A DNA stretch of 64,000 nt from Macrostomum lignano (lineage: Eukaryota). Both the position numbers and the translations under genes were made by a program. The stretch spans positions 1 through 64,000 of the forward strand of contig NIVC01001407.1 of assembly GCA_002269645.1 (NCBI GenBank), in the 5' to 3' direction. Positions 11,101 to 58,561 of this stretch are shown here, one piece after another; position 1 is the stretch's first letter; every line of letters begins with the position of its first letter. Below the pieces are notes generated by a model that worked only from the letters and a program-made list of their open reading frames with translations, did not search any database and was not told where the DNA came from.

Positions 11101-12702
11101 GGTGCTCCACGTGCTGCCATTCGACTCGGACAGGAAGCGAATGTCGGTGATTGTGAGGCACCCGGTGACCGGCCAGGTCATTCTGCTCACCAAAGGTGCG
11201 GATAGCGCAATATTTAGCCGGCTCAAAGAAGAGGACTCAAATGGTGAGTACTGCACACCGTTTTCTAGGTAAAAATTGATCTTTTTTAAAGTACATCTTT
11301 CTTAGGGAATAGCAATTAGCTATAAATCGTACTTTTATAGGAAGCAAACGGTTCTTATTTAATGAATTCTGATTTGAAAGTTATCGTTTCCAAATAATAA
11401 CAGTTAGATTAAAATTAAAAAACTAAAACTAAATTCAAAGTACAATAAGCGTTAGTATCAACCATACAGTAAGCGTATGAATTTATTTCAATTTTATAAT
11501 CATATTATTTTATTAATTTATTTATTTAAAAACTTCATTAATAGTCACAATGATAGTAAATTAACTCTTTGTCGCTAATAAAATCAAATAGGTTAATAAA
11601 ATTAACATTCAATTATCGATTTTACATGTCTAAATAGATTTAATATAATTATTAATTTTTTTTAATACAGATTTAGTATAATGAAACAGCCAATATAATT
11701 AGCTAGTTATTCTACATTCAATCCTATTATTAATAGATTATATTACGTATATTAAATTTATTAATCTCATCTAAGTAAAACAAAAGTACATTCTGAACAC
11801 GTAATTAAAGTACATTAAGACACTTTTATAGCTACAGGTTACAATTCTGAGACATAATTCTGAAAAATATTCACGGCCAAAAGGACACACACATGCACGA
11901 ACTATTTTAAACAGTTAAAAATTCAAAAGTTCCCCGGGAATGATTTGGTGGTGATAAGTTGGGTTTGAGAATCGCCTCAAACTGGGCAATATCCCGCTGT
12001 GCAAAGCTTAAAGTAGCGCTGTCCAACGCCCAATGCAGTACCTAACTGAGCTCACCTGCTAAAAATGAGTGAAGAGTTGTAGTTGCCAAGTCCTCAGCTG
12101 TGTTACCATGGCATCTGCTGGTAGGTGGAGCAAGAGATTTTGCTACTGTATAGCCGCCAAGATTAACCACATGTACGAAATTTTAGTCTGCAAAATTAGC
12201 TGTGCAGTTCTATTGTAGTTTTCCAACTCCAACCTCCCCGTGTCCTGCATATAGAGTCAGTGCAGCCCAGCTATAGAAAATGTCGGCATGTATCCATAGA
12301 AGCTGGAAAATTATCGATTGCTACTAAGAATTTTTTTAGCTTAACTGATTTTAGAAGTACAATGGTTGGTTGCGGGTTGTGTTAGTTAATTGGCTGGCTG
12401 CCAGAATTTAGACAGAATTTAAGACACACTAGAATATAAGACAACAAGACCGAACCCGAATTTACGAAGTACTTGATTGATGAGTTGATTTATTCGGTTG
12501 ATATTTTAATTTGTCAGATCTTGTGGTGGATAGCTTGATTTCATGATTTAATTGGTTGATTGACTGACTGATTTTTTGTTTAAGTGCTTCTTGGATAGAT
12601 AATTGATTGATTGATTAATTGACTGATGAATTGATTGACTAATAGATTGATTGATCGATTGATTGATTGATGATTGGTTGAATATATGATCGATTAATTG
12701 AC

Positions 12703-12750
<48 letters not shown>

Positions 12751-12754
12751 GGAC

Positions 12755-12802
<48 letters not shown>

Positions 12803-12866
12803 GGACTGATTGATTTATTGATGGACTGATTGATTTATTGATGGACTGATTGATTTATTGATGGAC

Positions 12867-12910
<44 letters not shown>

Positions 12911-12998
12911 GGACTGATTGATTGATTGATGGACTGATTGATTGATTGATGGACTGATTGATTGATTGATGGACTGATTGATTGATTGGTTGATGGAC

Positions 12999-13030
<32 letters not shown>

Positions 13031-13166
13031 GGACTGATTGATTGATTGATGGACTGATTGATTGATTGATGGACTGATTGATTGATTGATTGATTGATAG
13101 ACTGATTGATTGATTGATGGACTGATTGATTGATTGATGGACTGATTGATTGATTGATTGATGGAC

Positions 13167-13202
<36 letters not shown>

Positions 13203-22865: not shown

Positions 22866-23609
22866 GTTTTCTACAAAAATAGCTATAGAATGTTCCTTCA
22901 AAGGACTTCTTAACCTCTTGATAATACATGCACGTTTAAGGCGACATATGGTCAATTTAGTGTTTCAAAAGAAGAAAAGTAATTCCCAACTCGATTATGC
23001 ATTTTTGCCTACAATTAAATTGCACGATCAGCGATCGCTAAGCGTCCTACTACAGTTGCTCATGATTAACAGCCCATATAGCTGTAAGTTTTTAATTGTG
23101 CTAGCATTTAGGCCTGTTTAAGTCATCACTGCAACACCTACCTTCCATTCTCCTCTCTTCTCTCATACCTACTGCACTCTATTTGTCAAAAGTTGGCCAT
23201 TCCATTTCTAAAGAAACAATTTGCACTTGCTATGCCGAGCACGCAGCCACAGTCAGCTCTCATTGTTTAACTCAGCAGAGCTCGCAGCATCCCACTGCTC
23301 CTGCATCTCTCACCCCGCTGAGCAGAGCAGCTGCCGGACCCCCTGGCACCCAATCAGGTCTCAAACACAGCCGCTGGGTCAGAGAAGAGAATCGGCCTCA
23401 GTCCATTTAAACAAATTTCTCTGCACAGGGAGAGCTCAGAGATTTCAGTCCGTGACAGAGGGACTTTTGCTGCTGCTGCTGAGCTGGCAGGCGAATTCGC
23501 TTGAAGAAGAGCAAAGCACTCAGCTTGAAGCCGTGTGGAACAGCTGCGGCAGACAGCAGATCGGCAGAGAAGCACTGCTAGGAGAAGCAGTGTAGCCATA
23601 GCAACAGAG

Positions 23610-26600
23610 ATGGAGCGGAAGCTGAGAGCGACGCTGGAGGCTGGAGACAGCGAGGAGCTGCAGCGACTGTGCGGTGAGGTCGGCAGCAACATCGAGCTGG
23701 AGGTGGGCGGGTTCGACAAGCAAGACTTTCCTTTTGAAGAGCTTCGCAAAATGCCGCTGGTCCATCACGTGGCCTGCAAGCCGGTGAGATTGTCGTGCCT
23801 GGAGCTACTGATTGACAGATTCGGACCCGGCTGTCTGAAATACAGAAATGGTAGGAGTTATGGTGAGACTCCAGTGCAATTGGCAGCACAGCATCAGGAC
23901 GAATCTTGGATGAAGCTGGTTAAAGAGAAGGGAGGCAGAGACTGCTTGAGAATTGTCGATGGATCGGGACGGACAGTCGCTCACTTTGCTGCTTTAAACA
24001 AAAAAAGCAACTCTTGTCTGAAGTGGCTGGTGAAGGAGGTCGGCAGCGACTGTCTCACAGTTCCTGACGAATACGGTGACACGGCCGTCCATTTGGCCAC
24101 TCAGCATCAGGGCATCGAGTCGCTGGAGTGGATCAAGAGACAGATCGGAACTAACTGCTTTCGGCTAAAGGGACTGTGTGATAGAACAGCATTTCACTTT
24201 GCTGCTCAGAAGTTTGACAACTCAAATCTGAAGTGGCTGGTGAAGGAGCTCGGCAGCGACTGTCTCACAGTTCCTGACAGATTCGGTCACACGGCCGTCC
24301 ATTTAGCCGCTCAGCATCAAAGCATAGAGTCACTGGAGTTGATCAAGAGACACATCGGAACTAACTGCTTTCGGCTAAAGGGACAGTGTAACAGAACAGC
24401 ATTTCACATTGCTGCTCAGAAGTCTGACAATTCAAATTTGAAGTGGCTGGTGAATGAGCTCGGCAGCGACTGTCTCACAGTTCCTGACAAGTACGGTGAC
24501 CCAGCCGTCCTTTGGGCCGCAAGGTGTCAGCCAGTCGACTCTCTTCAGTTCATTTTTGACCGAATCGGAGCCGAAATGTTCAGCTTGAAGTACATGAAAG
24601 GCGAAACACTGGTTGATGCTGTTGAGAGTGATCCGTGCCGCACAGACCGGTCAGCAAAGCGGGCCTGGATTTCCTCCACGCAACGGCGGCTCGAAGCCTC
24701 TCGGCCTCCCGCTGGCAGCTCAGCGCCGACTGCCGCCTCAGCTGGGTGAGTCCTGACCACAGATACTAAAATAACTACATGGGCCACTCAGGCACATATA
24801 CACGTATACTTCATAAAACAGCTTTCTACTTTAGTTCAGTAGCAAAAAAGAATACATAAGCCATTTTACGGCTCGTATATAAATAAAGGCAGCTGAAATG
24901 ACTTTGATAAGTTAAGGAGCTTAAGGAACTTAAACAACTTGCTAATTGGTTCAGCAAAAATGTACATTACCCAGTCCACTGAAATGTACATGCATGACAG
25001 GATTAGGATGGAATTCCGAGAAAGGCATTAAAAACTGGGGCGGGCCGGGGCCGGGAGGGGAGGGGGTAAGGTGGAAAGACGCGATTGGAGGATTTAAGCT
25101 GAGGGAGGGGTAAGAGCCAATAAAATGAGACTTAAGTTTAAAAATGTGCATTAAAATGCTTCTGTTTAACTTGCTACTAAACTGAAAGTAGCAAGTTAAA
25201 CAGAATGTCCTGAGTGGAGCATCTAGTTATTCTACGAGTAGAATCCGTTGTCCTGACTGAGAGATGCTGTCTGACACTGAAATACTGAAATATTTTTGGC
25301 AAAAATTCATTTTGCTTTGATGATCGGCGCCCTGAAGTTCTCATGGCGCCGCAATCTCCCATGACGCCACCCAAAGCTTAATCTGCAGGAGCTTTTTATG
25401 CACGATGCAGTGTTCAAATGCTGTCTTGGCGACCTAGACATGTTTAAAAGTCTCACTCGTAAAACGCTTCCTACAGCGCTGCAGCTCCGCGTCCCCGCCT
25501 GCGAGCTCGGGAGCGCGTCCAGCCCCCTGGGCCGACTCCGGCATCGGAGGTCGGACTGCCTGACAAGACCCGGTGAGTCCGCGCTGAAAATATGAGCGGC
25601 AGTTGATGACGGTTGAAGGTGAGTGACGAAGAAGGGTGGTGACGCAGAAGGCTGACTGACTCAAAAGTACTCAGGAAGCCCCAAGTAACACAAAATTTAT
25701 CCAATTCCTTCACCTCATGTTTTCAGCGCCAAGAAGCAGCTGGACCCCAGCTTCACCGACTGGGACTTCATCCTGCACAAAAACAAGAAGCAGCTCATGG
25801 GCCGTGGTGGATTCGGAAAGGTGTACAAGGTCGTCACAGACCGAAATCAGACGGTGGCTGTCAAGGTGCTGCCCCTGAGCGGCACCGGCCAATCGGGGAA
25901 GCTGCAGAAAGCTGTCGAGATGGAGAAGCGGGGAGTTGAGATCCTCAAGCGACTCTCGCATCCCAACATTGTGCAGTTCCTCAAGTGCGAGCATAAGTCG
26001 GATGGGCTGTACATCTTCACAGAGCTGGTCTCGGGTCACAGCCTCCTTGAGCTGATGCAGCGTCAGAACAAGCCGTTTAAGGAGTCCGGGGTCAGGGACT
26101 TCTCCAGACAGGTGTGTCTCTGGGTTCTTTGGGATTGCTTGGCATGTATGGGATCAGTGTGGGATCAATGTGGGATCAGTGTGAGATCAGTGTGGGATTA
26201 GTGTGGGATCAGTGTAGGATCAGTGTGGAATCAGTGTGGTTGAGATCCAAAATGAATTGATCCGATTTTATGATTGCTCAAAACTGCTCCACCCGCAGAT
26301 CTGCTCAGGCCTGAACTTCCTGCACTGCCAGCAGCGGGGCGCCATCTTGCACCGTGACATCAAGAGCTCAAACGTGATGCTCACCAACGAGGGCGTCATC
26401 AAGCTGATCGACTTCGGTCTGGCCAGGGAGATCTTCAACACCTGCAGCCTGAGCGCAGGCAACCAGCCAAAAGGCACCTGGCACTTCATGGCGCCCGAGA
26501 TGCTCATGGGCGAGGGCAATTCGATTCCGTACTCAGCCAAGACCGACGTGTGGGCCTTCGGCTGCACCGTGTATGAGCTGACGACCATGCAGCCTCCTGA

Positions 26601-26784
26601 CGGCAACGAGCCGCAGCAGCGCATCGTCATCCTGAGATACGGAGAGCGGGCGATGCCTCGGATTGCGGACGGGTTCTCAGCCGGCCTGAAGGACTTCTAC
26701 CTCAGGTGCGTAGACTATGACCCGAGGAAGCGAGCGGACACCGCGGAGCTGCTGCGGCACAGCTTCCTGAGTGCCTCATCGTGA
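23610..26784 (+). CDS. Ankyrin-repeat + Ser/Thr kinase fusion protein, copy A (~700 aa; MAP3K19/YSK4-like STE kinase domain)
   Basis: Exons 23610-24745, 25477-25572, 25727-26111, 26299-26784 (2103 nt, open frame). Exon 1 has ~8-9 35-aa ankyrin repeats. Kinase motifs: GRGGFGKVY, VAVK, HPNIVQF, HRDIKSSNVML..EGVIKLIDFG, GT..FMAPE, DVWAFG. The apparent stop of the ankyrin ORF lies inside the donor GG|GTGAGT. Confidence 0.88.
26149..26237. repeat. 11-bp repeat (GTGGGATCAGT)n in kinase intron of copy A (shorter in copy B, ~35375-35410)
   Basis: Direct reading; copy number differs between paralogs. Confidence 0.9.
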
Positions 26785-26858
26785 CTGCGAGAGCGATGCG
26801 CTGTGAGGGAGCGGAGCGACTCTTGAAGCGGGCGGTTTTGCTTGCTGACGTTGTCTGT

Positions 26859-27212
26859 TTTTGTTTATCCGATTGCTATTTTTGTTTATCTGATCGTACT
26901 TTTGTTTATCTGATCGTACTTTTGTTTATCTGATCGTACTTTTGTTTATCTGATCGTACTTTTGTTTATCTGATCGTACTTTTGTTTATCTGATCGTACT
27001 TTTGTTTATCTGATCGTACTTTTGTTTATCTGATCGTACTTTTGTTTATCTGATCGTACTTTTGTTTATCTGATCGTACTTTTGTTTATCTGATCGTACT
27101 TTTGTTTATCTGATCGTACTTTTGTTTATCTGATCGTACTTTTGTTTATCTGATCGTACTTTTGTTTATCTGATCGTACTTTTGGTTATCTGATCGTACT
27201 TTTGTTTATCTA
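26859..27212. repeat. 20-bp minisatellite (TTTTGTTTATCTGATCGTAC)n
   Basis: Homogeneous 20-bp period just 3' of the copy A stop. Confidence 0.97.
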
Positions 27213-27592
27213 ATTACATCTTTTGATTAATCAACTGTTTTTGATTTTAATTTCAACTGAAATTTTAATTTTATATATTTGACTGCCCCTGGGCTTGTTT
27301 TACCGGTTGCTCTTTCCAATTAATGAGACATTTTTTTGCTGACTCGAGTGCTATTCCAGTAAACTCCGGCACAAGGCCAATCACAATTTCCCCAATCTGC
27401 TCAGACTGCTCAATGCCGACTCCAGATTTTCTGTTGCCGAGAATTTTTCACATTTTTCAGCCACCGGTTTGGCGCTTTTCCGGCTCTGATTTTTGTATTT
27501 GATTTTTGGACTGACTTTTTATTAGCAACTGTTGGAGCAGGAAGTCCAGTGCTTACTCAAAATTTCTCAGTTAAATATACAGCCACCGTTTG

Positions 27593-27815
27593 GCTTGCCG
27601 TGACCCGTGGTGTCCTGACTTGCCGTGACCCGCTGTGTCCTGACTTGCCGTGACCCGCTGTGTCCTGACTTGCCGTGACCCGCTGTGTCCTGACTTGCCA
27701 TGACCCGCTGTGTCCTGACTTGCCGTGACCCGCTGTGTCCTGACTTGCCGTGACCCACTGTGTCCTGACTTGCCGTGACCAGCTGTGTCCTGACTTGCCG
27801 TGACCAGCTGTGTCC
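27593..27815. repeat. 25-bp minisatellite (TGCCGTGACCCGCTGTGTCCTGACT)n
   Basis: ~9 copies. Confidence 0.95.
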
Positions 27816-28516
27816 CATTTCATATTTCAATATTTCGCAGCATCATTTCTGAGCCCCACTCAGTCCAATGCACAGAACAGGTGGGAAGGCAGAGCTGATG
27901 AAGCAGGAATGCAGTGAAGCTGGCCATTGTTTTCAAAGGGCTTGCAGAGTGTCATGAGGTCTGAGGCTGCCTCACGGCTCGGCCCCTCACGCAGTGAGCA
28001 GGAGATGTGCAGAGCCCTTAACTGCACATACGCTGCAGAGCTGCTCCAGTTGCCATGGCAACGGGGGAGACTCGAGCTCGGAGAGACACAGAGAAGTCTG
28101 TGGACAGCTGAGCAATCTGCTCACCTGGAGGCTGGGTGGTACGGCTTGTTGCTTCATCTGCACAAAAGGGAGTTCGAACGAGCATCAGCCATTCTGTGCA
28201 TCTCTTTTGAACAGCTGATGCTGCATCAATGATGCTGGCAGACACTTGAGTCTGTGCTCACTCAGTGCACTGTGCAATGTGCATAAATAATTGTTTGCAG
28301 TGGCTTCGCATTGCATTGAACTGAGACAATGGCGGGGCATGAGGGCTGCTCAGCCACCTCAGCGGGGCGCCGCTGTTTTGAGCAGGAAATGAGAATAAAA
28401 CCGCATTTCTGATTTTATTTGGACCGAACTTGGTGGGAAACACTGTTGAGACTACTCTAGGTAGCAGAGTATGGTTTTAGACTGAATGCACACTTGCCGT
28501 GTTAGATATGGCTGTG

Positions 28517-28690
28517 TCCTGTTAGACATGGGAGTCTCCTGTTAGACATTGGAGTCTCCTGTTAGACATGGGGGTCTCCTGTTAGACATGGGAGTCTCCT
28601 GTTAGACATGGGAGTCTCCTGTTCGACATGGGAGTCTCCTGTTAGACATGGGAGTCTCCTGTTCGACATGGGAGTCTCCTGTTAGACATG
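28517..28690. repeat. 20-bp minisatellite (CCTGTTAGACATGGGAGTCT)n
   Basis: ~8 copies. Confidence 0.93.
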
Positions 28691-28747
28691 AGAGTCTTCT
28701 GTTAGGGATAGGCATGCAGCCAGATCTGCATGCCTATCCCAAGCCTT

Positions 28748-29163
28748 TGTGTCTGGCTCTGTGTCTGGCTTTGTGTCTGGCTCTGTGTCTGGCTTTGTGT
28801 CTGGCTTGGTGTCTGGCTCTGTGTCTGGCTTTGTGTCTGGCTTGGTGTCTGGCTTGGTGTCTGGCTTTGTGTCTGGCTTGGTGTCTGGCTTGGTATCTGG
28901 CTCTGTGTCTGGCTTTGTGTCTGGCTTGGTGTCTGGCTTGGTATCTGGCTTTGTGTTTGGCTTGGTGTCTGGCTCTGTGTCTGGCTTTGTGTCTGGCTTG
29001 GTGTCTCGCTCTGTGTCTGGCTTTGTGTCTGGCTTGGTGTCTGGCTTTGTGTCTGGCTTTGTGTCTGGCTCTGTGTCTGGCTTTGTGTCTGGCTTTGTGT
29101 CTGGCTCTGTGTCTGGCTTTGTGTCTGGCTCTGTGTCTGGCTCTGTGTCTAGTGTTTGGCTCT
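28748..29163. repeat. 12-bp minisatellite (GTGTCTGGCT(T/C)(T/G))n
   Basis: 12-bp period; gives CLAL/SGFV/DTKP pseudo-ORFs. Confidence 0.96.
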
Positions 29164-29784
29164 GCCTGACAGTGCCTGAATGGAAAAAAGTCACCTTACC
29201 TTACCTATGTTACAGACTACAGGAATTACCGACAGCAAAAGCTCGGCTATACGTTTACGTGAGAAATGCCACCAGTTCCTTGTGCTCTAAAAGTGCAATT
29301 TAGACGCTGTAAAATCGTTCAATCAAACAAATAAAAAGTGACGTCATGACGTCATGACGTCGAGCAACAGGCCATCATTGAGCAGTGCTTTGAGCAGAAA
29401 TGCGTTGATGTGCCGGATGTCAGCTTCGGCAACAGGGAGGGTCTGTCGTTATGCCAGGTGTGTTTCAGTTGCTGCTTTTTTTCTCCGCTGTTGCTGCTTT
29501 GTTTCTCCGCTGTTGCTGCTTTGTTTCTCCGCTGTTGCTGCTGTTTTTCTTTGCTGTTGCTTCTTCCGCTGTTTGTTCTTCTCCCGTCTCCTCTTCTCCT
29601 CTTCCCTTTTCCCTCTTTCCCTCCTCCCATCTTTCTCTCTTCCATGCTTAAGGAATGAAATTCTCTTTTTTAGCTGTTTCATTAGCAATTTTTTCTTTGT
29701 CCATAAATTTTTTCTAGACAAATGTTACTGGCTGTTTAACCATACATTTGCTTCAAATGAAATCTGCGTGCGAGGCCTTACTGT

Positions 29785-29880
29785 CTAAATACACCATCAC
29801 AGACAGGATTGTCACCATCACAGACAGGATTGTCACCATCACAGACAGGATCGTCACCATCACAGACATGATTGTCAGCA
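29785..29880. repeat. 21-bp repeat (CACCATCACAGACAGGATTGT)n
   Basis: ~4 copies. Confidence 0.85.
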
Positions 29881-29937
29881 ATTACCAGAAAGTTTCAAAG
29901 ATTCTCAAGAAATTTCAAAAACGCTTTGTGACAACAT

Positions 29938-30360
29938 AAAGGTCAAGGGTCGTGCGGAAATTGCTAAGAGATCAAAGGTCAATGGGGAATTGCTGAGAGT
30001 TTATGGGTCATGCAGGAATTGCTGAGAGGTCAAAGGTCATGCGGGAATTGCTGAGAGATCAAAGGTCATGCGGGAATTGCTGAGAGTTTATGGGTCATGC
30101 GGGAATTGCTGAGAGATCAAAGGTCATGCGAGAATTGCTGAGAGATCAAAGGTCATGCAGGAATTGCTGAGAGATCAAAGGTCAATGGGGGAATTGCTGA
30201 GAGATCAAAGGTCATTGGGGAATTGCTGAGAGGTCAAAGGTCATGCGGGAACTGCTGAGAGATCAAAGGTCATGGGGGAATTGCTGAGAGTTTAAGAGTC
30301 ATGCGGGAATTGCTGAGAGGTCAAAGGTCATGCGAGAATTGCTGAGGGGTTAAGGGTCAG
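29938..30360. repeat. ~29-bp minisatellite (GAGATCAAAGGTCATGCGGGAATTGCTGA)n
   Basis: ~14 moderately diverged copies. Confidence 0.93.
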
Positions 30361-31239
30361 TGACTTCAATGCAAGGCTCTAAAGTCGAACCCCAGGTTTG
30401 CTCAATTTGTCTTCTGTCATTCTCAAAAATCTGTTCGAGGATGCCGTCTCAATCTCAAAGTCTGACTTCATGACGTGTCTGTTAAACTTCTGCCATGATA
30501 CAGCTTAGCGTCACCGGCTGTGTTTTGCTGTAATTGCTTTACTATTATAGGATGAGCTGTGCTTCTAAGATTAGAATCTTAGCTCTAGGCTTCATTAATG
30601 GGCTTAAGATTACAATTTGATTCTCGAATCTCTGTTGGACTACCTGGCCTCGGCAGAGATCGAATTCCGGCAGGCAGGTGAGCAAAGCCAGCACCCGTCT
30701 GGAAAAATGAACTTTTGTGTATAATTTTGAATAATTAAGATTGATATCGTTTGAGACAGCCTATTTATGGCCAGTAAAATACAATTATTTTAATTTTTGT
30801 GGCATGTAAACCTTTTGCTCAGAGTGATTCGGTACAGAACTGTCTACTTAATGATTCAATCATGTAATCATGTCTTCTACTAAACAGCATAGCTCATGTT
30901 TCCACGAATTTTTCATTTAATTCAGAAATATTTCACATCCTGGTTTTACAGCAGCTGCAATGCTCAGCTGCCTCGGCTTTGAGCACTCTGGGAGGCAGAT
31001 TTCTAAGAAGCTGAAAGCACGAGTCATAGTTTTTATTGTATTCTCAAGTTCGTATGCTGTCAGCTCAAATAGCACCCGTATTTTTAACTTGCAATGAATG
31101 ACAATGAATTGAAATCAAATGTGATTGGTATTTCAGTGCAATAATTTTGTGTGTTATTCCCATTTGAACTAAGAATATTAAGGATTCTGTAGCTCAGTTT
31201 GTCAGTGGAGTTGCTGGTAGGTTATGACCGTGGGCGCAA

Positions 31240-32280
31240 TGATCCTACTACTGACATAATTAGCTACAGACCAATTAGTTTAGCCTCTTGCCTGTGTAAA
31301 CTCTATGAAAAGGTAATGGCAAGAAATCTGCTAATCATAATTGAAAACAAAGGAATAATCAATGCAGACCATTGTACATTCGACAATATGTTGCGACTCT
31401 CAGATGATGTGCTGGAAATACTCCAGGCTTAAAAACAATATCATTGACGTCATCATGTGTCTTTGATGGCGTCTGGCAGACATTGGTCAGAATATAGTTC
31501 CCAGTTACCTTGACGACAGGGAATTCGAATTCAGGTAGGTGGAGCTGTCAGCGAAGCCTTCAAGTCGGCTGCTGGCGTTACTCTCAAGGTGGGGTGTTGT
31601 CTCGACTCCTCTTCATTGTGCTTGTCAGCTCGATAGAGACTCAATGGCTGCTTCATCACCTAGAAAAAGTGGCTGGGTGACGTTTGCATCACTATCAATC
31701 CAGCGAAAAGCAAGCCTGTCTCTTTAAGTTTAAAGGAAATCACGCACATCACAGGTCTTGATAAGCCGTCCATCAAACCTGGTCAGGAAGACATCCAATA
31801 CTTTGATTCTGCTGTCTTCCTAGATGTACTCAACTTTATCCAGAACGGCTGGCATCACAATGCCCAGGCTCAACTCAATAAGAAGGATCGCTCGGAGTAC
31901 CAGGATCGCCCAACTTAACTTGCGCTCAGACTGATTCACGGGTCTTACATTGAGAGCGGCATTACATACTTCATTATTAACTTCAGGTCCTCCAAAACCG
32001 GACGCTCAGGATTTCCCTTGATGCGCCTAAGTACACTAAAATCAGCTACTTACTGCATGATTCCAGCAAGATGCCCAGGTTTAAAGAGGGAATATGGATC
32101 CTGGTTAAAATATGGCATAAAAAAGTCACAAAAGGGTTCCATAGCTTTGACCTCAAAGATTGGAGCAGGCCGCCGACCATAGAGTCCCTGCTACCACCAA
32201 ACTCAGAAGAGCCATGAATAACTTGAAATATTGATCTCAGGACCTCGCTGGGGATATAGGCCTCCTCCCAGCTTCCCAAA
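31240..32280 (+). mobile_element. Degenerate non-LTR retrotransposon (LINE) reverse-transcriptase fragment
   Basis: SYRPISLASCLCKLYEKVMA at ~31260 and QGGVLSRLLFIV at ~31575 (the GVPQGSVLSPLLF motif); many stops and frameshifts; boundaries approximate. Confidence 0.75.
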
Positions 32281-32667
32281 CATTGCCTCTTTCAAGACTC
32301 ATACTGACTACAATGAAAAATACCCCACTTATATTATTTGTTTGGCTAATCACCCCATATTTCTCTTTGCACTGTAGCGCGTAAACAGTTTTTTACACCT
32401 CTAAAATATTTGTATTAGTAATCATTTTTCGTTTGTATTGTTGAATTGTTTTAATTTTTTTAATTGCTTAAAATTGATTTACTTTTACACCTGCCTCCAG
32501 CTCTTTTTGCGAGTGCTTTTTACTCCTGTCCTCCTTTCCTCTAATATTTATTACTTGAATTGCCATTACTCCTGCAATATTTATTTCGCTTTGTCTAACT
32601 CGGGAATCGGAAATTTTACAATCAAATTCAAACGAAAATTACAGAAAATATTAGCAGAAGAGCCCGG

Positions 32668-32748
32668 AAACCTGTTAGATACTGATGTCACCTGTTAGAT
32701 ACTGATGTCTCCTGTTAGATACTGATGTCTCCTGTTAGATACTGATGT
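32668..32748. repeat. 20-bp repeat (CCTGTTAGATACTGATGTCT)n
   Basis: ~4 copies. Confidence 0.88.
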
Positions 32749-33354
32749 AAAGTGTCAGTGGCAAACCCAAGCGGAATTTTCCATTCATTTGAATTCAGCA
32801 ACAGAAAAATCCTGAGTCAAGCATTTTCAGCAAAATATTTGCCATGCATCTCATCTGCAAACTAAATTAAAAATAATCACAGAACTCTGCTTGAATCAAG
32901 GCCTCAGCCCTGCCCTACCTCCCCTCTCCATCTCTCTCTCCTCGTATCTCAGCTGCCGCCCCTTCACCCCTGCCCACTGACAATGCACTTGCTATGCCGA
33001 GCACGCAGCCACAGTCAGCTCTCATTGTTTAACTCAGCAGAGCTCGCAGCATCTCACTGCTCCTGCATCTCTCACCCCGCTGAGCAGAGCAGCTGCCGGA
33101 CCCCCTGGCACCCAATCAGGCCTCAAACACAGCCGCTGGGTCAGAGAAGAGAATCGGCCTCAGTCCATTTAAACAAATTTCTCTGCACAGGGAGAGCTCA
33201 GAGATTTCAGTCCGTGACAGCGGGACTTTTGCTGCTGCTGCTGAGCTGGCAGGCAAATTCGCTTGAAGAAGAGCAAAGCACTCAGTTTGAAGCCGTGTGG
33301 AACAGCTGCGGCAGACAGCAGATCGGCAGAGAAGCGCTGCTAGGATAAGCCAGC

Positions 33355-35933
33355 ATGGGGAACGCTTGGAGTGTATCCATGGAGATGGAGCGGAAGCTGA
33401 GAGCGACACTGGAGGCTGGAGACAGCGAAGAGCTGCAGCGACTGTGCGGTGAGGTCGGCAGCAACATCGAGCTGGAGGTGGGCGGGTTCGACAAGCAAGA
33501 CTTTCCTTTTGAAGAGCTTCGCAAAATGCCGCTGGTCCATCACGTGGCCTGCAAGCCGGTGAGATTGTCGTGCCTGGAGCTGCTGATTGACAGATTCGGA
33601 CCCGGATGTCTGAAATTCAGAAATGGTAGGGGTGAGACTCCAGTTCACTTAGCAGCCCAGCATCAGGACGAGTCTTGGATGAAGCTGGTTAAAGAGAAGG
33701 GAGGCCGAGGTTGCTTGAGAATTGTCGATAGATGGGGAAAGAGAGTTGCTCACTTTGCCGCTGGGAACAGAAAAAGCAACTCTTGTCTGAAATGGCTGGT
33801 GAAGGAAGTCGGCAGCGACTGTCTCACAGTTCCTGACAAAGATGGTAACATGGCGGTCCATTTGGCCGCTCAGCATCAGGGCATCGAGTCGCTGGAGTGG
33901 ATCAAGAAACAGATTGGAACTGACTGCTTTCGGCTAAAGACAAAGAGTGATAGAACAGCATTTCACATTGCTGCTCAGAAGTCTGACAATTCAAATCTAA
34001 AGTGGCTGGTGAAGGAGCTCGGCAGCGAGTGTCTCACAGTTCCTGACAGAGACGGTGACACGGCCGTCCATTTTGCCACGAAGCATCAGGGCATCGAGTC
34101 ACTGGAGTGGATCAAGAGACAGATCGGAACAGACTGCTTTCGGCTAAAGTCAAACAGTGGTACAGCATCATTTCATTTTGCTGCTCAGAAGTCTGAAGGT
34201 TCAAATTTGGAGTGGCTGGTGAAGGAGCTCGGCAGCGACTGTCTCACAGTTCCTGACTGTTGGTGCTGTGACACGGTCGTCCATTGGGCCGCTCAGCATC
34301 AGCCAGTCGACTCTCTTCAGTTCATTTTTGACCAAATCGGAGCCAAAATGTTCAGCTTGATGAACATGTGGGGCAGAACACCGGCTGATGCTGTTGAGAG
34401 TCGGCGGTGCCACACAGACCGGTCAGCAAAGCGGCAATGGATTTCCTCCACGCAGCGGCGGCTCGAAGCCTCTCAGCCTCCCGCTGGCAGCTCAGCGCCG
34501 ACTGCCGCCTCAGCTGGGTGAGTCCTGACTGAGAGCTGCTGCCTGACACTCAAAATGAGAATGAGTAGAAAAAATGATGCGGTAAATTTCGAGTAGCTTA
34601 AAGATCGTTATACTTTCATTCTACTCTTTAAGTCATTTAAGTCATCGTACTCAGGTCGAATTTAAGTACAAATTTAGCAAAATCCCTCATACATTTTCCC
34701 TCATTCGCCCCCACAGAGCTGCAGCTCCGCGTCCCCGCCCGCGAGCTCGGGACCGCGTCGAGCCGCCGCCTGGACCGACTTCGGCATCCGAGGTGGAACC
34801 GCCTGAGGAGACTCGGTGAGTCCGCGCTTAAAATATGGTGGCACAGAATGGTGGGGACGCAGAAGGGTGGTGACGCAGAAGGCTGAGTGACTCCAAAGTA
34901 CTCAGAAAGCCCCAAGCCACACAAAATTTAACGAATTCCTTCACCTCATATTTTCAGCGTCAGGAAGCAGCTGGACCCCAACTTCACCGACTGGGACTTC
35001 ATCCGGCAGGACAACAAGAAGCAGCTCATCGGCCGTGGTGGATTCGGCAAGGTGTACAAGGCTCTCACAGACCGCAACCAGACGGTGGTGTCAAAAAATT
35101 ACCACTGAGCCATGCGAGGCAAGCTGCAGGGAAACTGAAGATAATTCTGATGGAGAAGCGGGGAGTTGAGATCCTCCAGCGATTTTCACATCCCAACATT
35201 GTGCAGTTCCTCAAGTGCGAGCAGAAGTCGGATGGGCTGTACATCTTCACCGAGCTGGTCTCGGGTCACAGCCTCTTTGAGCTGATGCAGCGTCAGAACA
35301 AGCCGTTCAAGGAGTCCGGGGTCAGGGACTTCTCCAGACAGGTGCGTGTCTGGGCTCTCTGGGATTGTGTGGCATGGGATCAGTGTGGGATCAGTGTGGG
35401 ATCAGTGTGTTGGCATCCAAAATTAATAGTTGCAACTTTATCTGCAGATCTGCTCAGGTCTGAACTTCCTGCACTGCAATCTGGAGGGCGCCATCTTGCA
35501 CCGGGATATAAACTGCAACAACGTGATGCTCACCAACGAGGGCGTCATCAAGCTGATCGACTTCGGTTTGGCCAAGGAGGTCGGGAAGAGCAGCGGTCTG
35601 AGCACAGGCTTCGGTCCAAAAGGCACCACCTACTTCATGGCTCCGGAGCTGTTCGACATAGAAGTCCAATCACTTCCGTACTCAGCCAAGACCGACGTGT
35701 GGGCCTTCGGCTGCACCGTGTATGAGATGACGGCCATGCAGCCTCCTGATGGGGACAAGCCAAGTGAAAGTATTAACATTCGAAGATTGATGAAGCAGGA
35801 GATGCCTCGGATTGCGGACGGGTTCTCAGCCGGCCTGAAGGACTTCTACCTCAGGTGCGTAGACTATGACCCGAGGGAGCGAGCGGACACCGCGGAGCTG
35901 CTGCGGCACAGCTTCCTGAGTGCCTCATCGTGA
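33355..35933 (+). pseudogene. Ankyrin-repeat + kinase gene, copy B; 1-bp deletion in the VAVK codons (pseudogene, truncated ~470-aa product, or assembly indel)
   Basis: Exons 33355-34517, 34717-34815, 34958-35341, 35448-35933, with the same intron positions as copy A. GTG G-T GTC (35085-35092) versus GTG GCT GTC in A gives a premature TGA at 35106-35108. Catalytic loop reads HRDINCNN. Confidence 0.8.
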
Positions 35934-37329: not shown

Positions 37330-40300
37330 TCACGCAGAGTCAACGGACTCCAGAAACACCAGCTGCTCAAAAGGAAACGCAGCCGACATCTGATTGCCAG
37401 TGAGTCTCTGCAGACCCTGCGACTTCACCGAGTAGGACGCGTCCAAATTCTTTTTGAGGAAGCTGTACACCTCATCGTAGCTGAAGCCGTTGAGCTCAGC
37501 GGCATGCCGGCACTGATCCCGCAGCTTCTGCAGCATCGTCTCCCGACCCTCCCGGCCAAACACCCGCTCGGTGGCGACGTCTGTCCGGTTCTCGAAGGTT
37601 CTTTCAAGCCGGCCGCCGCGGGTGCCGCCGAGGCCACCGCTGCCGAGTGCACCGTCCAGCTCCTTAGCGAATTTCAGCGTCACCTGGACGTTGTCTTCGT
37701 CGTCGTCTTCGTAGTCGTCGAAGTCGTCTTCGAAATCGGCCATGGCCTGTTTTTGGGACAATGGAGGCGGTTCGCAATCAATGTTTGTGGACTAGTTACA
37801 TTGTCGAAAGTGTACACTCATCAATATGCTAAATTTTCCATCCTGAAACCAGGTAGACCTGACTGTAGCTACATGTATAACCTCATGTAAAAGATGTAAA
37901 TAAAATGAAATCAAATGTAAATGTAAAAGATGTAGATGTAAGAATTTTTTTACTTTTTCATTGCCGATTAGATAAAAAAATTAAATGTCATTTTGTTTTG
38001 AAATTTGACACTATTAAATGACATCAGTTTCTTTTAATTTGTTAGAATTTTTTGTCAGAATGGTTTGAAATGGTTCAATCTCGCCTCTTTCCTCAATCGC
38101 GCACTCCACCCCTCCTTTCTAGATAAGACAAGGAGGCGAGATTGAAGAGCCAATCAGAAGGCAGCGATGGATAGAGAGAGAGAAAAATAACAAGACTGAA
38201 CCAGACAGATACGGAGACTCGAGAGAAATAGAGTAAACAGAGACAAGTGCAGATGAACTAAAAAATGACTAAGACAGTCGTGACAGGTCCTGTACATATT
38301 TGGAAACTATCGAAAATTTTCTGCCGATTTTCTAAAAATTTTGATGTTCCCCGGGCCCCGTTTTTTGGGGAGTGTCGATTTCATATCTCTATGACTTATC
38401 ACCAATAATTCTACGCTATAAAGTTCTATGCTATTCTATGCTATGCTATATAAAGTGACTAAAATCAAAATTAGTCCAGCACCTGATAGTAGGTGTCAGC
38501 CAGCTCTTCATTCTCCATGGCGGCCTCTTTAAAACTGCCAGCCCTATTCATCTGCTGATAGAGGTCAATTTTCATCGGCGTGATGGGCCGCTCGTCTCTG
38601 CTTGAAGCCACGGCAGTTGGCCGAGTCGGCTGCCGTCGAGCCAGACTGGCCGGCACCAGATCGTCTTCCTCGTCGCTGTCATCCCCGTCATTGCCGTAAT
38701 AGTCTTCTTCAGAATCTCGGCGACCTTCATTGTGGCGAGGCTCGTAGTCATGCGACTCCCAAGCGGTGTGCTTCTGCTGTTGCCTCTGCTGCTGCTGCTC
38801 CTCCAAGAAGCGTTGGTTCCGCACTGGCAGGTCGTCTTGCGGCTGAGGAAACGCCGTTCTGCCTTCGCTGCCGCTCGGTCGAAAAGTCCGATTGCCGAAC
38901 TTCTTAGCCAGCTCGGCGTTTCTACGGCTCGTCTCGGCGGCCTGTGTGGCCAGCTCTCTGGCGCGGTCGTCTGCCTCGCGTTGCTTTCGCAACAGCATCT
39001 TCTGGTGCGGGCTGAGGGCATTGAAGTCTCCACCGGCCTGGCCGGGTCCCTTGACCTTCTGCCGTACCGTGTCGCTGTTGGGCTTCAGAGTGACTTCAGC
39101 GGCAGCCGCTGCGGCCGCCGCCATCGCTCGGGATTCGAACTCCAGACTGTTGAGCGTTGGTTTCTCCTGCAGCACGGATAGTAGGTTTTTGCTTTCGGCT
39201 TCGTTGATTGTCTCCTCCATCAGCAGCTGTTGCTGCCGGTTGCCACCGCTCTGAGACTCAACAGCCTCGCGCAGGCTCTGCATCTGCTCGCGTATGAACG
39301 GCTCTTTGAGCACCTCTCTGGCGCTGAGTCGGTCCTGCGGATCTTTGGCTAGCATCTTCTCCAGAACCGCCTGCAGCTCGGGAGGGTAGCGGTCTGGGAT
39401 CACCGGGCAGGGGTTGCCACAGATGCTGAACAGAATCCCCATCAGACCAGCGCCTTTGAATGCGTGCTCCAGGGCGCACATCTCGTATAGAATGCAGCCG
39501 ACACTCCAAATGTCGCTTTTGGCGTTGTAGCCTGGAACAGGTCGGGGCGGGTGGGAATAGAGAATGAATTTGGGTGAGAGTAGAGAATGAATGGAGGTGA
39601 GAATAGAGAATGAATGGGATGAGAATGGAGAATGAATGGAGGTGAGAAAAGAGAATGAATGGGGGTGAGAATAGAGAATGAATGGGAGTGAGAATAGAGA
39701 ATGAATGGGAGTGAGAATAGAGAATTAATGGAGGGGAGAATAGAGAATGAATAGAGGTGAGAATAGAATGAATGGGAGTGGGAATAGAGAATGAATGGGG
39801 TGAGAATAGAATGAATGGGAGTGGGAATAGAGAATGAATGGGGTGAGAATAGAGAATTAATGGAGGTGGGAATAGATAATGTATGGGAGTGAGAATAGAG
39901 AATGAATGGGAGTGAGAATAGGGAATGAATGGGAGTGAGAATAGAGAATGAATGGGAGTGAGAATAGAGAATGAATGGGAGTGAGAATAGAGAATGAATG
40001 GGAGTGAGAATAGAGAATGAATGGGAGTGAGAATAGAGAATGAATGGGAGTGGGAATAGAGAATGTATGGAGGCGAGAATAGAAAATGAATGGAGGTGAG
40101 AATAGAGAATGTATGGAGGTGAGAATAGAGAAAGAATAGAGGTAAGAATAGAGAATGAATGGGGAAGTAGATGGCACGCCGCAGATCTCCCCAGCTCACC
40201 CTCATGCTTGAGCAGTTCCGGACTCATAAAGTACGGCGTGCCAAGAAAAGTTGACGCCATATCGGAGTTGCTCATCAGCACCCTCGAGATGCCAAAGTCG

Positions 40301-41454
40301 CCAATTTTCACTGTGCCACTTTTCAAAAATATGTTTTTAGTTTTCAAATCTCTGTGCAAAATTCGTCGACCGTGCAAATAGTCAACGCCTAGTAGGATTT
40401 GGATGAACCATCGGATGGTGGTTTGCACCGGTAGGTTGTGTCCTGCCTGTTTCAGACGGCTGATGCACTGGTCCAGGTCGCCTTCGTCGCAGTACTCGGT
40501 CACGATGCAAAACGACGGCGGCTCTGCGTTGTTTTTGTCGAAAAAAGAATCAATAAAAATCGGAGGCCACAAGTGGACAGTCAAATTCTACTTTCAAGGT
40601 CACTTAAGGCGGAATCATTTTCAACGTAATTAAGCGGAAATTTCTTTCAAGGTCACACAAGTGAAAACCATCCTACTTTCAAGGTCGCTTAATAGGAAAT
40701 CCTATATTCTTTCAAGGTCGGTTACCGGAAAATTCTACTTTTAAGGTCAACTTTACTGGAAAGCCTTTACTTTCAAGGTCGCTCAACGGGGAATCCTACT
40801 TTTAAGGTCGCGCAACGGAATTCCTGACTCCAAGGTCGCTCGACGGAAAATCGTACTTTCAAGGTCACTTAGCGGGAAATCCTAGCTCGTACTTTCAGGG
40901 ACACAGCGAAAATCCATCCTTAGCTACTTTTAATTTCACTCAAAAGAGAATCCTCACTTTCAAGGTCACTTAATGGAAAAGTCCACCCATGATGTCATCA
41001 AATGAAAAAATCTCACTTTCCATGCTACTGAATGGCGAGGAAATCCTACTTATAAGATTGCCCAACGGGAATCCCGATTTCAAGGTCACCGGTTTGTAAA
41101 ATTTACTGCCACGAGGAATCCCAATCTTTTTTCAGGGAAAAGTTGTTTTTAAAGGAAAACAAATACTTAATGAGCCAACCTACCCATAAAACAATTGTAA
41201 AACTTCAGAATAGCTGAGTGATCAAGCTTTCCAAGCAGCTTGGCCTCGTGCACAACTTCCAGAGTTTCATCCGGGTCAACTTCACCAATTTGAACTTCTT
41301 TCAGCACTTTGAATTTCTCTTCCGAGCTGCGCAAATCTTCAACAAGGTGCACCGTGCCGAAAGCGCCTTTGCCAATTTGGCGAACCACGCGATAGCGGTT
41401 GCTAAGGACGCGAGTCTTCGGCGTCTGGGTTGTGTCGGTTGTTGCAGTGGACAT
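37330..41454 (-). CDS. NEK11: NIMA-related kinase NEK11 (~686 aa)
   Basis: Exons (minus strand) 41454-41184, 40523-40200, 39531-38483, 37746-37330; 2061 nt with consistent phases. Motifs: GKGAFGTVHLV, KVLKE..IGEVDPDET, FCIVTEYC, WFIQILLGVDYLH.RRILHRDLKTKNIFLK, GTPYFMSPE.LKHEGYNAKSDIWS; C-terminal ..YDEVYSFLK...FEQLVFLE as in NEK11. Confidence 0.92.
39553..40168. repeat. 23-bp minisatellite (GAGAATAGAGAATGAATGGGAGT)n filling NEK11 intron 2
   Basis: 23-bp period; occupies ~92% of the 668-bp intron. Confidence 0.96.
40586..41090. repeat. Old degenerate ~29-bp tandem array with conserved core CTACTTTCAAGGTC(A/G)
   Basis: ~15 diverged units in NEK11 intron 1; core retained, flanks variable. Confidence 0.8.

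Positions 41455-42993: not shown

Positions 42994-58561
<15,568 letters not shown>

What the first reader, a model, noticed from the sequence alone, without database searches (positions are those of the whole stretch)
23610..35933. Tandem pair of ankyrin-repeat / MAP3K19-like kinase fusion genes
Seen: the ORF track shows separate ankyrin and kinase ORFs, but they splice in frame through a 96/99-bp linker exon into one ~700-aa protein, and the unit occurs twice ~9.8 kb apart with identical intron positions. Knowledge: HRDIKxxNVML...G.IKLIDFG is the MAP3K19/YSK4 (STE11-group) wording, and canonical MAP3K19 has no N-terminal ankyrin stack. Known ANK+kinase architectures (ILK, TNNI3K, RNase L; RIPK4/ANKK1 in reverse order) use other kinase groups. 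Inference: a lineage-specific domain fusion that is being amplified as a family.
Basis: partly seen in the sequence, partly recalled or inferred. Interest (0 to 1): 0.75.

Follow-up and report, generated by a model that had tools for sequence, protein, structure and literature searches.

The report
Tandem ankyrin-kinase genes, one broken
Two neighbouring genes of the flatworm Macrostomum lignano each join an ankyrin-repeat domain to a MAP3K-like protein kinase; one is intact, the other carries a frameshift, and both belong to a large undescribed family that looks almost confined to this lineage, which makes it a modest gene-family curiosity.

Summary
The window is Macrostomum lignano. A public UniProt model (P0001) is a chimera of exactly these two genes.

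**Copy 1** (23610-26784, 4 exons, all GT-AG) splices into an intact 700-aa protein:
- about 8 ankyrin repeats,
- a disordered Pro/Ala/Arg linker, partly encoded by a 96-nt exon that some annotated models omit,
- a C-terminal kinase domain with all catalytic motifs.

**Copy 2** (33355-35933) has the same exon plan but is not in frame. Exon 3 is one base short (between 35088 and 35089), which gives a stop at 35106-35108 inside the VAVK motif. Its catalytic loop also reads HRDIN instead of HRDIK.

**Kinase type.** The kinase is STE-group, not TKL. Plant MEKK-type MAP3Ks score 137-173 bits, carp MAP3K19 141, ASK1 121 and RIPK4/ANKK1 38-48. My tree makes the family its own clade and does not place it with MAP3K19.

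**Family.** M. lignano has dozens of annotated relatives, and those in the Mlig_3_7 annotation come from RNA-seq-derived models. An older form with about 15 canonical ankyrin repeats (P0247) has a collinear 877-aa counterpart on a transcript-like contig from an unidentified organism.

**Verdict.** The fusion and its amplification are real. The fusion predates the amplification, and the family is unnamed but already in databases. Interest is moderate to low.

The parts
23222..23609 (+). Upstream flank of copy 1 (5' UTR or promoter region) that is duplicated together with exon 1
   Evidence: blastn block 23222-24757 versus 32984-34529, 90.5% identity.
23610..24745 (+). Copy 1 exon 1: N-terminal cap plus about 8 ankyrin repeats, a helix, and the start of the disordered linker (aa 1-378). 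It ends in phase 2.
   Evidence: Pfam Ank_2/Ank_4/Ank above cut-offs. Donor GG|gtgagt. AF2 solenoid at aa ~50-340 with pLDDT >90. The ATG used by paralogues ('MATEMERKL') is ATA here (23598-23600), so translation probably starts at 23610.
24017..24515 (+). Internal 210-nt (70-aa, two-ankyrin) tandem repeat within copy 1 exon 1
   Evidence: TRF: period 210, 2.4 copies, 90% matches. Paralogues carry 3, 4 or 5 such units.
25477..25572 (+). Copy 1 exon 2: 96-nt in-frame linker exon (AAAPRPRLRARERVQPPGPTPASEVGLPDKTR). It is probably a cassette exon.
   Evidence: Borders are ag|CGCTGC and CCCG|gtgagt. P0002, P0006, P0007 and P0008 include it; P0001, P0005, P0010 and P0011 skip it. AF2 gives pLDDT ~30 here.
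25727..26111 (+). Copy 1 exon 3 (385 nt): juxta-kinase motif LDPSFTDWDF and the kinase N-lobe (GRGGFG, VAVK, alpha-C, hinge)
   Evidence: Pkinase E 8e-18; splice sites.
26299..26784 (+). Copy 1 exon 4: kinase C-lobe (HRDIKSSN, DFG, GTWHFMAPE, DVWAFG) and the stop codon
   Evidence: Pkinase E 2e-34; phase-0 intron at FSRQ|ICSG.
32984..33354 (+). Upstream flank of copy 2, homologous to 23222-23609
33355..34517 (+). Copy 2 exon 1. The ORF starts MGNAWSVSMEMERKL (an MGxxxS N-myristoylation-type start, as in paralogue P0011) and continues into the ankyrin repeats.
33786..34257 (+). 210-nt tandem repeat within copy 2 exon 1
   Evidence: TRF: period 210, 2.2 copies, 87% matches.
34717..34815 (+). Copy 2 exon 2: 99-nt linker exon
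34958..35341 (+). Copy 2 exon 3 (384 nt, one base short). The frameshift lies between 35088 and 35089, within the codons for TVAVK, and gives a premature TGA at 35106-35108.
   Evidence: Frame-by-frame translation. tblastn splits this exon into two frames. The public model P0001 ends at the same stop.
35448..35933 (+). Copy 2 exon 4: kinase C-lobe, open in its own frame, but with HRDIN (AAC 35511-35513) in place of HRDIK

Best explanation
These are two tandem members of a family of cytoplasmic ankyrin-repeat/STE-group protein kinases that has expanded in Macrostomum.

**Gene plan.** One large exon encodes an N-terminal ankyrin solenoid. That solenoid is built partly from a 70-aa two-repeat unit whose copy number varies between paralogues. 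A short optional exon adds to a disordered Pro/Ala/Arg-rich tether. Two further exons encode a C-terminal MEKK-like (STE11-like) Ser/Thr kinase domain.

**Copy 1.** It is intact and has every catalytic motif.

**Copy 2.** In this assembly it is a pseudogene or a truncated ANK-only product. It has a 1-nt frameshift in the ATP-binding strand and has lost the catalytic-loop lysine.

**Inferred mechanism, not shown.** Copy 1 is probably an active MAP3K-type kinase. The ankyrin stack would act as the targeting or partner-binding (possibly autoinhibitory) module, held to the kinase by a flexible tether whose length is set by alternative splicing.

**History.** The family arose from an older ANK+kinase gene (the P0247/P0245 type). 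It then diversified by tandem and dispersed duplication, repeat-unit gain and loss, and exchange between paralogues.
For: - **Species and locus identity.** P0001 (UniProt, M. lignano) contains the copy 1 C-terminus and copy 2 verbatim.
- **Gene models.**
- **Domains.**
- **AF2 model.** ANK solenoid at pLDDT >90, a disordered stretch at aa 368-413, then a kinase fold.
- **Kinase group, sequence.** PDB phmmer top hits are SLK, STK25, ASK1, MST3/4, LOK and MAP3K2, with no TKL kinase in the top 60.
- **Kinase group, structure.** The Foldseek best match is the ASK1 kinase domain, TM 0.82.
- **Kinase group, scores.** Plant MEKKs 137-173 bits and MAP3K19 141, against RIPK4 46 and ANKK1 38.
- **Transcript support for joined models.** The Mlig_3_7 (BOX15_) annotation derives from an RNA-seq genome-guided assembly (PMC5730564). 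P0002 and P0005-P0011 carry ANK and kinase in one frame.
- **Second organism.** P0245 is an uninterrupted ORF on a 3.2-kb contig, and it also shares the juxta-kinase LDxxFxxW motif.
- **Family breadth.** In a full HMMER scan, every representative I looked up with >=44% kinase-domain identity is M. lignano, except P0245.
- **Older form and shared intron.**
- **Uneven divergence of the two halves, with high dN/dS (0.56-0.73).**
Against: - No RNA-seq reads were examined for this locus itself. Junction support comes by homology to paralogues.
- The one public model of this locus (P0001) is a chimera that skips exon 2 and uses a different donor in exon 3. The isoforms actually made here are therefore unknown.
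- Many UniProt M. lignano entries are kinase-only (280-400 aa). These may be fragments, but they could be real shorter transcripts.
- The copy 2 frameshift could be an assembly error, because I could not inspect reads.
- STE11 membership is not recovered by my small NJ tree (deep bootstraps 1-13%).
- No functional or expression data exist for any member.
Confidence: 0.85

Rival explanations
1. The ankyrin ORF and the kinase ORFs are separate genes. For example, they could be consecutive cistrons of a trans-spliced operon, which is common in M. lignano, and the in-frame join would then be an annotation artefact.
For: M. lignano has widespread SL trans-splicing and polycistronic precursors (PMC5730564). 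Many database entries are kinase-only. P0001 shows that read-through and chimeric models occur at this very locus.
Against: Exon phases fit exactly (1136 + 385 nt = 507 codons, and the 96/99-nt exon is a multiple of 3) in both copies. At least 8 independent paralogue models join the two parts. P0245 carries both on one uninterrupted ORF. P0247 has the same plan and the same intron position. Exon 3 has no start codon upstream of the G-loop.
Confidence: 0.05
2. Both copies are functional, and the copy 2 frameshift is a sequencing or assembly error.
For: All other exons of copy 2 are open. The splice sites are intact. Exon 4 is open for 161 codons downstream of the shift. Long-read assemblies commonly contain single-base deletions (general knowledge).
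Against: The deletion is not in a homopolymer (GGTGG[C]TGTC). Copy 2 independently lacks the catalytic-loop Lys that all 8 aligned paralogues keep. The same truncation is present in public model P0001, although that model may derive from the same assembly. dN/dS between the copies is high.
Confidence: 0.2
3. The family is the flatworm orthologue of MAP3K19/YSK4 that acquired ankyrin repeats.
For: Carp MAP3K19 (P0431) is the best non-Macrostomum hit of the P0245 kinase domain (E 5e-33, 35% identity). It is also the best named animal kinase for copy 1 (141.5 bits despite a truncated N-lobe). Both share the HRDxKxxNxML...KLIDFG wording.
Against: Plant MEKKs score higher (up to 173 bits). In the NJ tree MAP3K19 clusters with plant MEKKs (89%, and 74% with the NPK1 type) and not with this family. 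Identity is only about 35%.
Confidence: 0.12
4. The genes are relatives of the known TKL ANK-kinases (RIPK4/ANKK1, ILK, TNNI3K).
For: They share the same two domain types. RIPK4 and ANKK1 appeared as weak hits of the full-length query.
Against: Kinase-domain scores are 46 and 38 bits, against 137-173 for MEKKs. Domain order is reversed in RIPK4 and ANKK1. No TKL kinase appears in the top 60 PDB hits.
Confidence: 0.01

Closest known systems
MEKK-type MAP3Ks of the STE11 family (plant ANP/NPK1 and MAPKKK3, animal MAP3K19/YSK4, ASK1/MAP3K5)
   Same: The kinase domain gives its best sequence scores against this family: 137-173 bits to plant MEKKs, 141 to MAP3K19 and 121 to ASK1. The best structural match is the ASK1 kinase domain at TM 0.82. 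All catalytic motifs are present, and the kinase sits at the C-terminus as in MAP3K19.
   Different: Identity is only 30-40%. The family forms its own clade and is not nested with MAP3K19 or the plant MEKKs in my tree. It has an N-terminal ankyrin stack, which none of the MEKK-type sequences retrieved here carries (and the precomputed Pfam columns).
RNase L (ankyrin repeats, then pseudokinase, then RNase)
   Same: It has the same N-to-C order, ankyrin solenoid followed by a kinase fold. Foldseek aligns about 680 columns of the AF2 model to RNase L chains.
   Different: TM is only 0.31-0.33, rmsd is about 22 A and identity is 15%. The window protein has no KEN/RNase domain, and its kinase has intact catalytic residues.
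TKL ankyrin-kinases: ILK, TNNI3K, RIPK4, ANKK1
   Same: An ankyrin repeat module is combined with a protein-kinase fold in one polypeptide.
   Different: They belong to a different kinase group (RIPK4 46 bits, ANKK1 38 bits). RIPK4 and ANKK1 have the reverse domain order.
Giardia Nek-ankyrin expansion
   Same: It is a lineage-specific amplification of a kinase joined to variable numbers of divergent ankyrin repeats, with many catalytically dead members (PMC3218828).
   Different: It is built on the Nek family, the kinase is N-terminal to the repeats, and the lineage is unrelated. This is an analogy only.

Membership tests
Eukaryotic protein kinase, catalytically competent | GxGxxG loop, VAxK lysine, alpha-C Glu, HRDxKxxN, DFG and APE motifs | tested here: met
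   Copy 1 has GRGGFG, VAVK, E in VEILKRL, HRDIKSSN, DFG and MAPE, with Pkinase hits above cut-off. Copy 2 fails: it has a frameshift in VAVK and reads HRDIN.
STE group (versus TKL and other groups) | Kinase domain most similar to STE7/11/20 kinases | tested here: met
   PDB top 60 are almost all STE20/STE11 kinases, plus NEK, PKR and PLK3, with no TKL. Foldseek top hits are ASK1, SLK, LOK, MST4 and MAP4K4. MEKKs score 137-173 bits against RIPK4/ANKK1 at 38-46.
STE11/MEKK family | Phylogenetic nesting within the STE11 clade | tested here: inconclusive
   NJ with 200 bootstraps: the family is monophyletic (99%), the MAP3K19 + plant MEKK clade (89%) excludes it, and deeper nodes have 1-13% support. 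Reference sampling was small and no ML method was available.
STE11/MEKK family | Phosphorylates a MAP2K | not testable with these tools
   This needs a biochemical assay.
MAP3K19/YSK4 orthologue | Groups specifically with MAP3K19 and gives its best score to MAP3K19 | tested here: not met
   MAP3K19 scores 141.5 bits, below plant MEKKs at up to 173. MAP3K19 groups with plant NPK1-type kinases (74%) and not with this family.
Ankyrin-repeat proteins | Repeated ~33-aa helix-turn-helix units that form a solenoid | tested here: met
   Ank_2, Ank_4, Ank, Ank_3 and Ank_5 all score above curated cut-offs. AF2 gives about 8 helix pairs with ~35-aa period at pLDDT >90.
RIPK4/ANKK1-type (TKL) ankyrin kinases | RIPK-type kinase at the N-terminus with ankyrin repeats at the C-terminus | tested here: not met
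   Domain order is reversed, and the kinase scores only 38-46 bits.
RNase L | ANK + pseudokinase + C-terminal KEN/RNase domain | tested here: not met
   The protein ends with the kinase domain. Foldseek TM is 0.32.

The most novel reading that the evidence does not exclude
The family could be a fast-evolving set of intracellular sensors. The variable ankyrin stack would bind ligands or partner proteins, much as RNase L's ankyrin domain binds 2-5A. Binding would release a tethered MAP3K-like kinase and so feed stress, immune or reproductive signalling specific to macrostomid flatworms. Dead copies such as copy 2 would act as decoys or regulators.

What fits this reading:
- repeat-number variation between paralogues,
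- high dN/dS between the two copies,
- mosaic divergence of the two gene halves,
- a splice-tunable tether.

Nothing examined here tests it.
Probability: 0.1. Interest if true: 0.6.

Novelty: new variant of a known kind. Interest (0 to 1): 0.3.

Why it matters
The finding adds an N-terminal ankyrin stack joined to a C-terminal STE11-like kinase to the known ankyrin-kinase architectures, which otherwise use TKL, CAMK or Nek domains.

It also documents a sizeable, unnamed, lineage-restricted kinase expansion in a regeneration and stem-cell model organism that is genetically tractable, with transgenesis available (PMC5730564). That makes function testable.

In practical terms, it flags that the public model of this locus (P0001) is a chimera of two genes, and that one of the two is probably a pseudogene.

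It does not bear on a long-standing open question. Lineage-specific kinase expansions with repeat domains are common.

Tried and rejected
1. **Naming top hits from the full HMMER scan.** I hoped hits of 1150-1820 aa with a C-terminal kinase would turn out to be MAP3K19 or MAP3K1/4. They are unnamed ENA protist or metagenome proteins, plus one Chromera and one diplonemid entry, so they were uninformative.
2. **Identifying the organism behind SRR28338164 and SRR28338163 (P0245).** No paper cites these runs and I had no access to SRA metadata.
3. **Literature on the family.** Searching Macrostomum + ankyrin + kinase gave nothing relevant. Gene IDs of six paralogues appear in no paper text. The Schistosoma kinome paper lists only two STE11 kinases and links no ankyrin repeat to them.
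4. **ANK+kinase proteins of other taxa from the first search** (Phytophthora P0044, JGI P0090, P0062/P0107). Their catalytic loops are HGDLxxxN, HRDIAARN or HLDLKSPN, which are TK/TKL-type by my own knowledge, and two have the reverse domain order. They are not the same architecture.
5. **Other copies in the window.** The only other kinase is a Nek-like gene on the minus strand at 38471-40584, 26-36% identical and unrelated.
6. **Pfam on the suspected retroelement fragment at 31199-31432.** No hit.
7. **Genome-wide copy count.** A tBLASTn count was not possible, because the M. lignano genome is in none of the searchable DNA collections.


Full report
**What is in the sequence**

ORF listing and Pfam scans show an ankyrin ORF and two kinase ORFs on the + strand, and the set occurs twice.

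*Copy 1.* I joined the ORFs at the canonical splice sites visible in the sequence. The exons are 23610-24745, 25477-25572 (96 nt), 25727-26111 (385 nt) and 26299-26784. Every intron is GT-AG and the product is one open 700-aa frame.

*Copy 2.* The same sites exist: 33355-34517, 34717-34815 (99 nt), 34958-35341 and 35448-35933. Introns differ in length between the copies (731/154/187 nt versus 199/142/106 nt) but lie at the same codon positions.

*Copy 2 is broken.* Its exon 3 is 384 nt, one base short. A base is missing between 35088 and 35089, in the codons for the ATP-binding TVAVK strand. The frame therefore reads ...DRNQTVVSKNYH and stops at TGA 35106-35108. tblastn accordingly splits this exon between two frames. 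Copy 2 also reads HRDIN (AAC 35511-35513) where copy 1 and the six aligned paralogues read HRDIK. The catalytic-loop lysine is part of the HRDxKxxN motif of Ser/Thr kinases (textbook knowledge). In this assembly, then, only copy 1 encodes a full kinase.

**Source organism**

The full-length search returns Macrostomum lignano almost exclusively. The UniProt entry P0001 (905 aa) contains the C-terminal part of copy 1 verbatim. It then has a few short intergenic exons, followed by copy 2 from MERKL... to the same '...TVVSKNYH' end. The window is therefore M. lignano, and P0001 is a chimeric read-through model of exactly these two genes.

The neighbours are ordinary animal genes:
- a P4-type phospholipid flippase at about 9.5-18.5 kb, + strand,
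- a Nek-like kinase at 38.5-40.6 kb, - strand,
- a KIF1-type kinesin at 49-58 kb, + strand.

**Is the ANK-kinase join real?**

I could not look at reads, so support is by homology, from four lines.
- *Transcript-derived paralogue models.* The BOX15_ proteins come from the Mlig_3_7 annotation, which derives from a genome-guided RNA-seq transcriptome (StringTie/TACO/TBONE; PMC5730564). P0002, P0005, P0006, P0007, P0008, P0010 and P0011 carry ankyrin repeats and kinase in one frame and align end to end with copy 1 at 80-85% identity.
- *The linker exon is probably optional.* Some models contain the linker-exon peptide (AAAPRPRPRAR...) and others go straight from ...TAASAG to AKKQLDPSF. Exon 2 is a multiple of three in both copies, which fits a cassette exon.
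- *Exon phases fit.* Exon 1 (1136 nt) plus exon 3 (385 nt) equals 507 codons.
- *A second organism.* P0245 (877 aa) is an uninterrupted ORF with UTRs on 3.1-3.2-kb contigs assembled from two SRA runs of an unidentified organism. It has about 15 canonical ankyrin repeats followed by a kinase 49% identical to copy 1, and it includes the juxta-kinase LDxxFxxW motif.

**Protein anatomy**

The AlphaFold2 model was built on 20 family sequences (mean pLDDT 79). It shows:
- a cap and about 8 ankyrin-type helix pairs at aa ~50-340 (pLDDT >90),
- a long helix at 347-363,
- a disordered segment at 368-413, covering the end of exon 1 and all of exon 2,
- a kinase fold at 420-700.

The pTM of 0.51 fits two domains on a flexible tether.

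Part of the solenoid is a 210-nt (70-aa) tandem repeat, at 24017-24515 in copy 1 and 33786-34257 in copy 2. Paralogues carry 3, 4 or 5 such units.

Copy 2 and P0011 start with MGN..S, an N-myristoylation-type motif. In copy 1 the start codon used by most paralogues is ATA, and translation would begin four codons later.

**Which kind of kinase?**

*Sequence against solved structures.* The best matches are SLK (128 bits), STK25, ASK1/MAP3K5 (121), MST3/4, LOK, NEK1 and MAP3K2. There is no TKL kinase in the top 60.

*Structure.* Foldseek puts the ASK1 kinase domain first (TM 0.82). RNase L chains come next and align over about 680 columns, so the domain order is the same, but TM is only 0.32.

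*Full HMMER scan of 1.84 billion representatives.* Of the representatives with >=44% kinase-domain identity that I looked up, all are M. lignano except P0245. The first named single-domain outsiders are plant MEKK-type MAP3Ks: MAPKKK3-like at 40% identity and 174 bits, and NPK1 at 37%.

*MAP3K19.* A search with the P0245 kinase domain returned carp MAP3K19 (P0431) as its best non-Macrostomum hit.

Head-to-head phmmer scores for the copy 1 kinase domain:

| Reference | Bits |
|---|---|
| Plant MEKKs | 137-173 |
| MAP3K19 (N-lobe truncated) | 141.5 |
| Uncharacterised mollusc kinases | 118-127 |
| Nek | 111 |
| PAK | 104 |
| WNK | 97 |
| RIPK4 | 46 |
| ANKK1 | 38 |

*Tree.* In an NJ tree with 200 bootstraps the family is monophyletic (99%). 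MAP3K19 plus the plant MEKKs form a clade (89%) that excludes it, and deeper nodes are unresolved.

*Conclusion.* STE group is established. MEKK-like is the best description. MAP3K19 orthology is not supported.

**Family history**

*Size.* M. lignano has at least 20 clusters at 50% identity and at least 60 at 90%. The assembly is known to be redundant (180 Mb in >=95% duplicates; PMC5730564), so locus numbers are inflated.

*Clustering.* P0002, P0003 and P0121 lie on one contig. P0004 and P0005 lie on another.

*The P0002 locus.* The ANK exon and kinase exons are 15 kb apart, with stray kinase fragments around them.

*An older form.* P0247 (863 aa, about 15 canonical repeats) sits next to a laminin gene, with no second family member in the 9.8 kb retrieved. 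It is collinear with P0245 at 43% identity over 839 aa. Its last intron is at FTIQ|VC, the same position as FSRQ|IC in the window genes, and another intron lies just before the juxta-kinase segment. So the fusion predates the expansion of the subfamily with the degenerate 70-aa units.

*A member without ankyrin repeats.* P0249 belongs to the same kinase clade but has no ankyrin repeats. Domain content has therefore changed within the clade.

*The two window copies are a mosaic.*
- dS is 0.137 in the ANK exon and 0.265 in the kinase exons. dN/dS is 0.73 and 0.56 respectively.
- The copy 1 activation segment matches P0122, whereas that of copy 2 resembles P0007.
- This points to gene conversion or recombination among paralogues, and to weak constraint in at least one copy.

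**How it probably works (inference)**

Copy 1 has all catalytic residues and a GT..FMAPE activation segment, as STE kinases do. It is most likely an active MAP3K-like Ser/Thr kinase. The ankyrin solenoid would provide partner binding, localisation or autoinhibition through a flexible tether whose length depends on exon 2. Copy 2 would give at most a 457-aa ANK-only product, or none. None of this has been tested. No paper mentions the family.

**Comparison with known systems and novelty**

The known ankyrin-kinases use other kinase groups or other layouts:
- ILK, TNNI3K, RIPK4 and ANKK1 use TKL kinases.
- RNase L has a pseudokinase followed by an RNase domain.
- The Giardia Nek family has the kinase first and the repeats after it (PMC3218828).

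The ANK+kinase proteins of other taxa met here have TK/TKL-type catalytic loops.

An N-terminal ankyrin stack on a C-terminal STE11-like kinase is therefore a new variant of a familiar theme. The proteins are already in public databases as 'hypothetical' or 'protein kinase domain-containing' entries. I rate interest as moderate to low.

Noticed in passing
window 23610-35933; protein P0001: The public UniProt model P0001 (905 aa) is a chimera. It runs from the C-terminal half of copy 1 (exon 2 skipped, with a different donor in exon 3), through short intergenic exons (for example 'LQELPTAKARLYVY' near 29.2 kb), into copy 2 up to its frameshift stop. This is either a read-through or polycistronic precursor or a mis-merge.
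   Followed up: partly
window 38471-40584 (-): A Nek-like protein kinase gene lies on the opposite strand. It is 26-36% identical to the ANK-kinases. Pkinase scores E 2e-28 for the N-lobe and catalytic loop. A minisatellite-rich intron splits the domain, and the gene has a long acidic, Gln-rich C-terminal tail.
   Followed up: partly
window 37330-37761 (-): A 143-aa ORF with an acidic N-terminus (MSQKQAMADFEDDFDDYEDDDEDN...) has no Pfam hit. It looks like a real small gene between copy 2 and the Nek-like gene.
   Followed up: no
window ~9500-18600 (+) and ~49100-58400 (+): The flanking genes are a P4-type phospholipid-translocating ATPase (PhoLip_ATPase_C, E 1e-57) and a KIF1-type kinesin (Kinesin motor and KIF1B domains). 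Both have introns full of minisatellites.
   Followed up: partly
window 26149-26239 and ~35360-35410: The same 11-nt microsatellite (TGGGATCAGTG) sits in intron 3 of both copies, so it was duplicated with the gene. Other arrays between the copies are 26859-27211 (20-mer x17.6), 27594-27815, 28500-29150 and 29943-30346.
   Followed up: partly
window 24758-25469 (intron 1 of copy 1): Intron 1 of copy 1 is about 530 nt longer than that of copy 2. The extra DNA contains a hairpin-forming inverted repeat near 25165-25205 (ctgtttaacttgctact...agcaagttaaacag), which may be a small inserted element.
   Followed up: no
window 31199-31432 (+): A short ORF (…YRPISLASCLCKLYEKVMARNLL…) resembles the start of a non-LTR retrotransposon reverse transcriptase. 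Pfam gave no hit at E<=0.001, so this is unverified.
   Followed up: partly
locus L001 (NIVC01000558.1), 3682-3807 and 12471-12596: At the P0002 paralogue locus, isolated fragments of the kinase C-lobe (aa 583-624, 55-57% identity) lie upstream of the ANK exon and just downstream of it. The real kinase exons are 15 kb away. These look like debris of earlier duplications.
   Followed up: no
protein P0249 (M. lignano, 718 aa): This protein belongs to the same kinase clade (47% identity, same juxta-kinase motif) but has a different, helix-rich N-terminal region and no ankyrin repeats. That shows domain replacement within the clade.
   Followed up: partly
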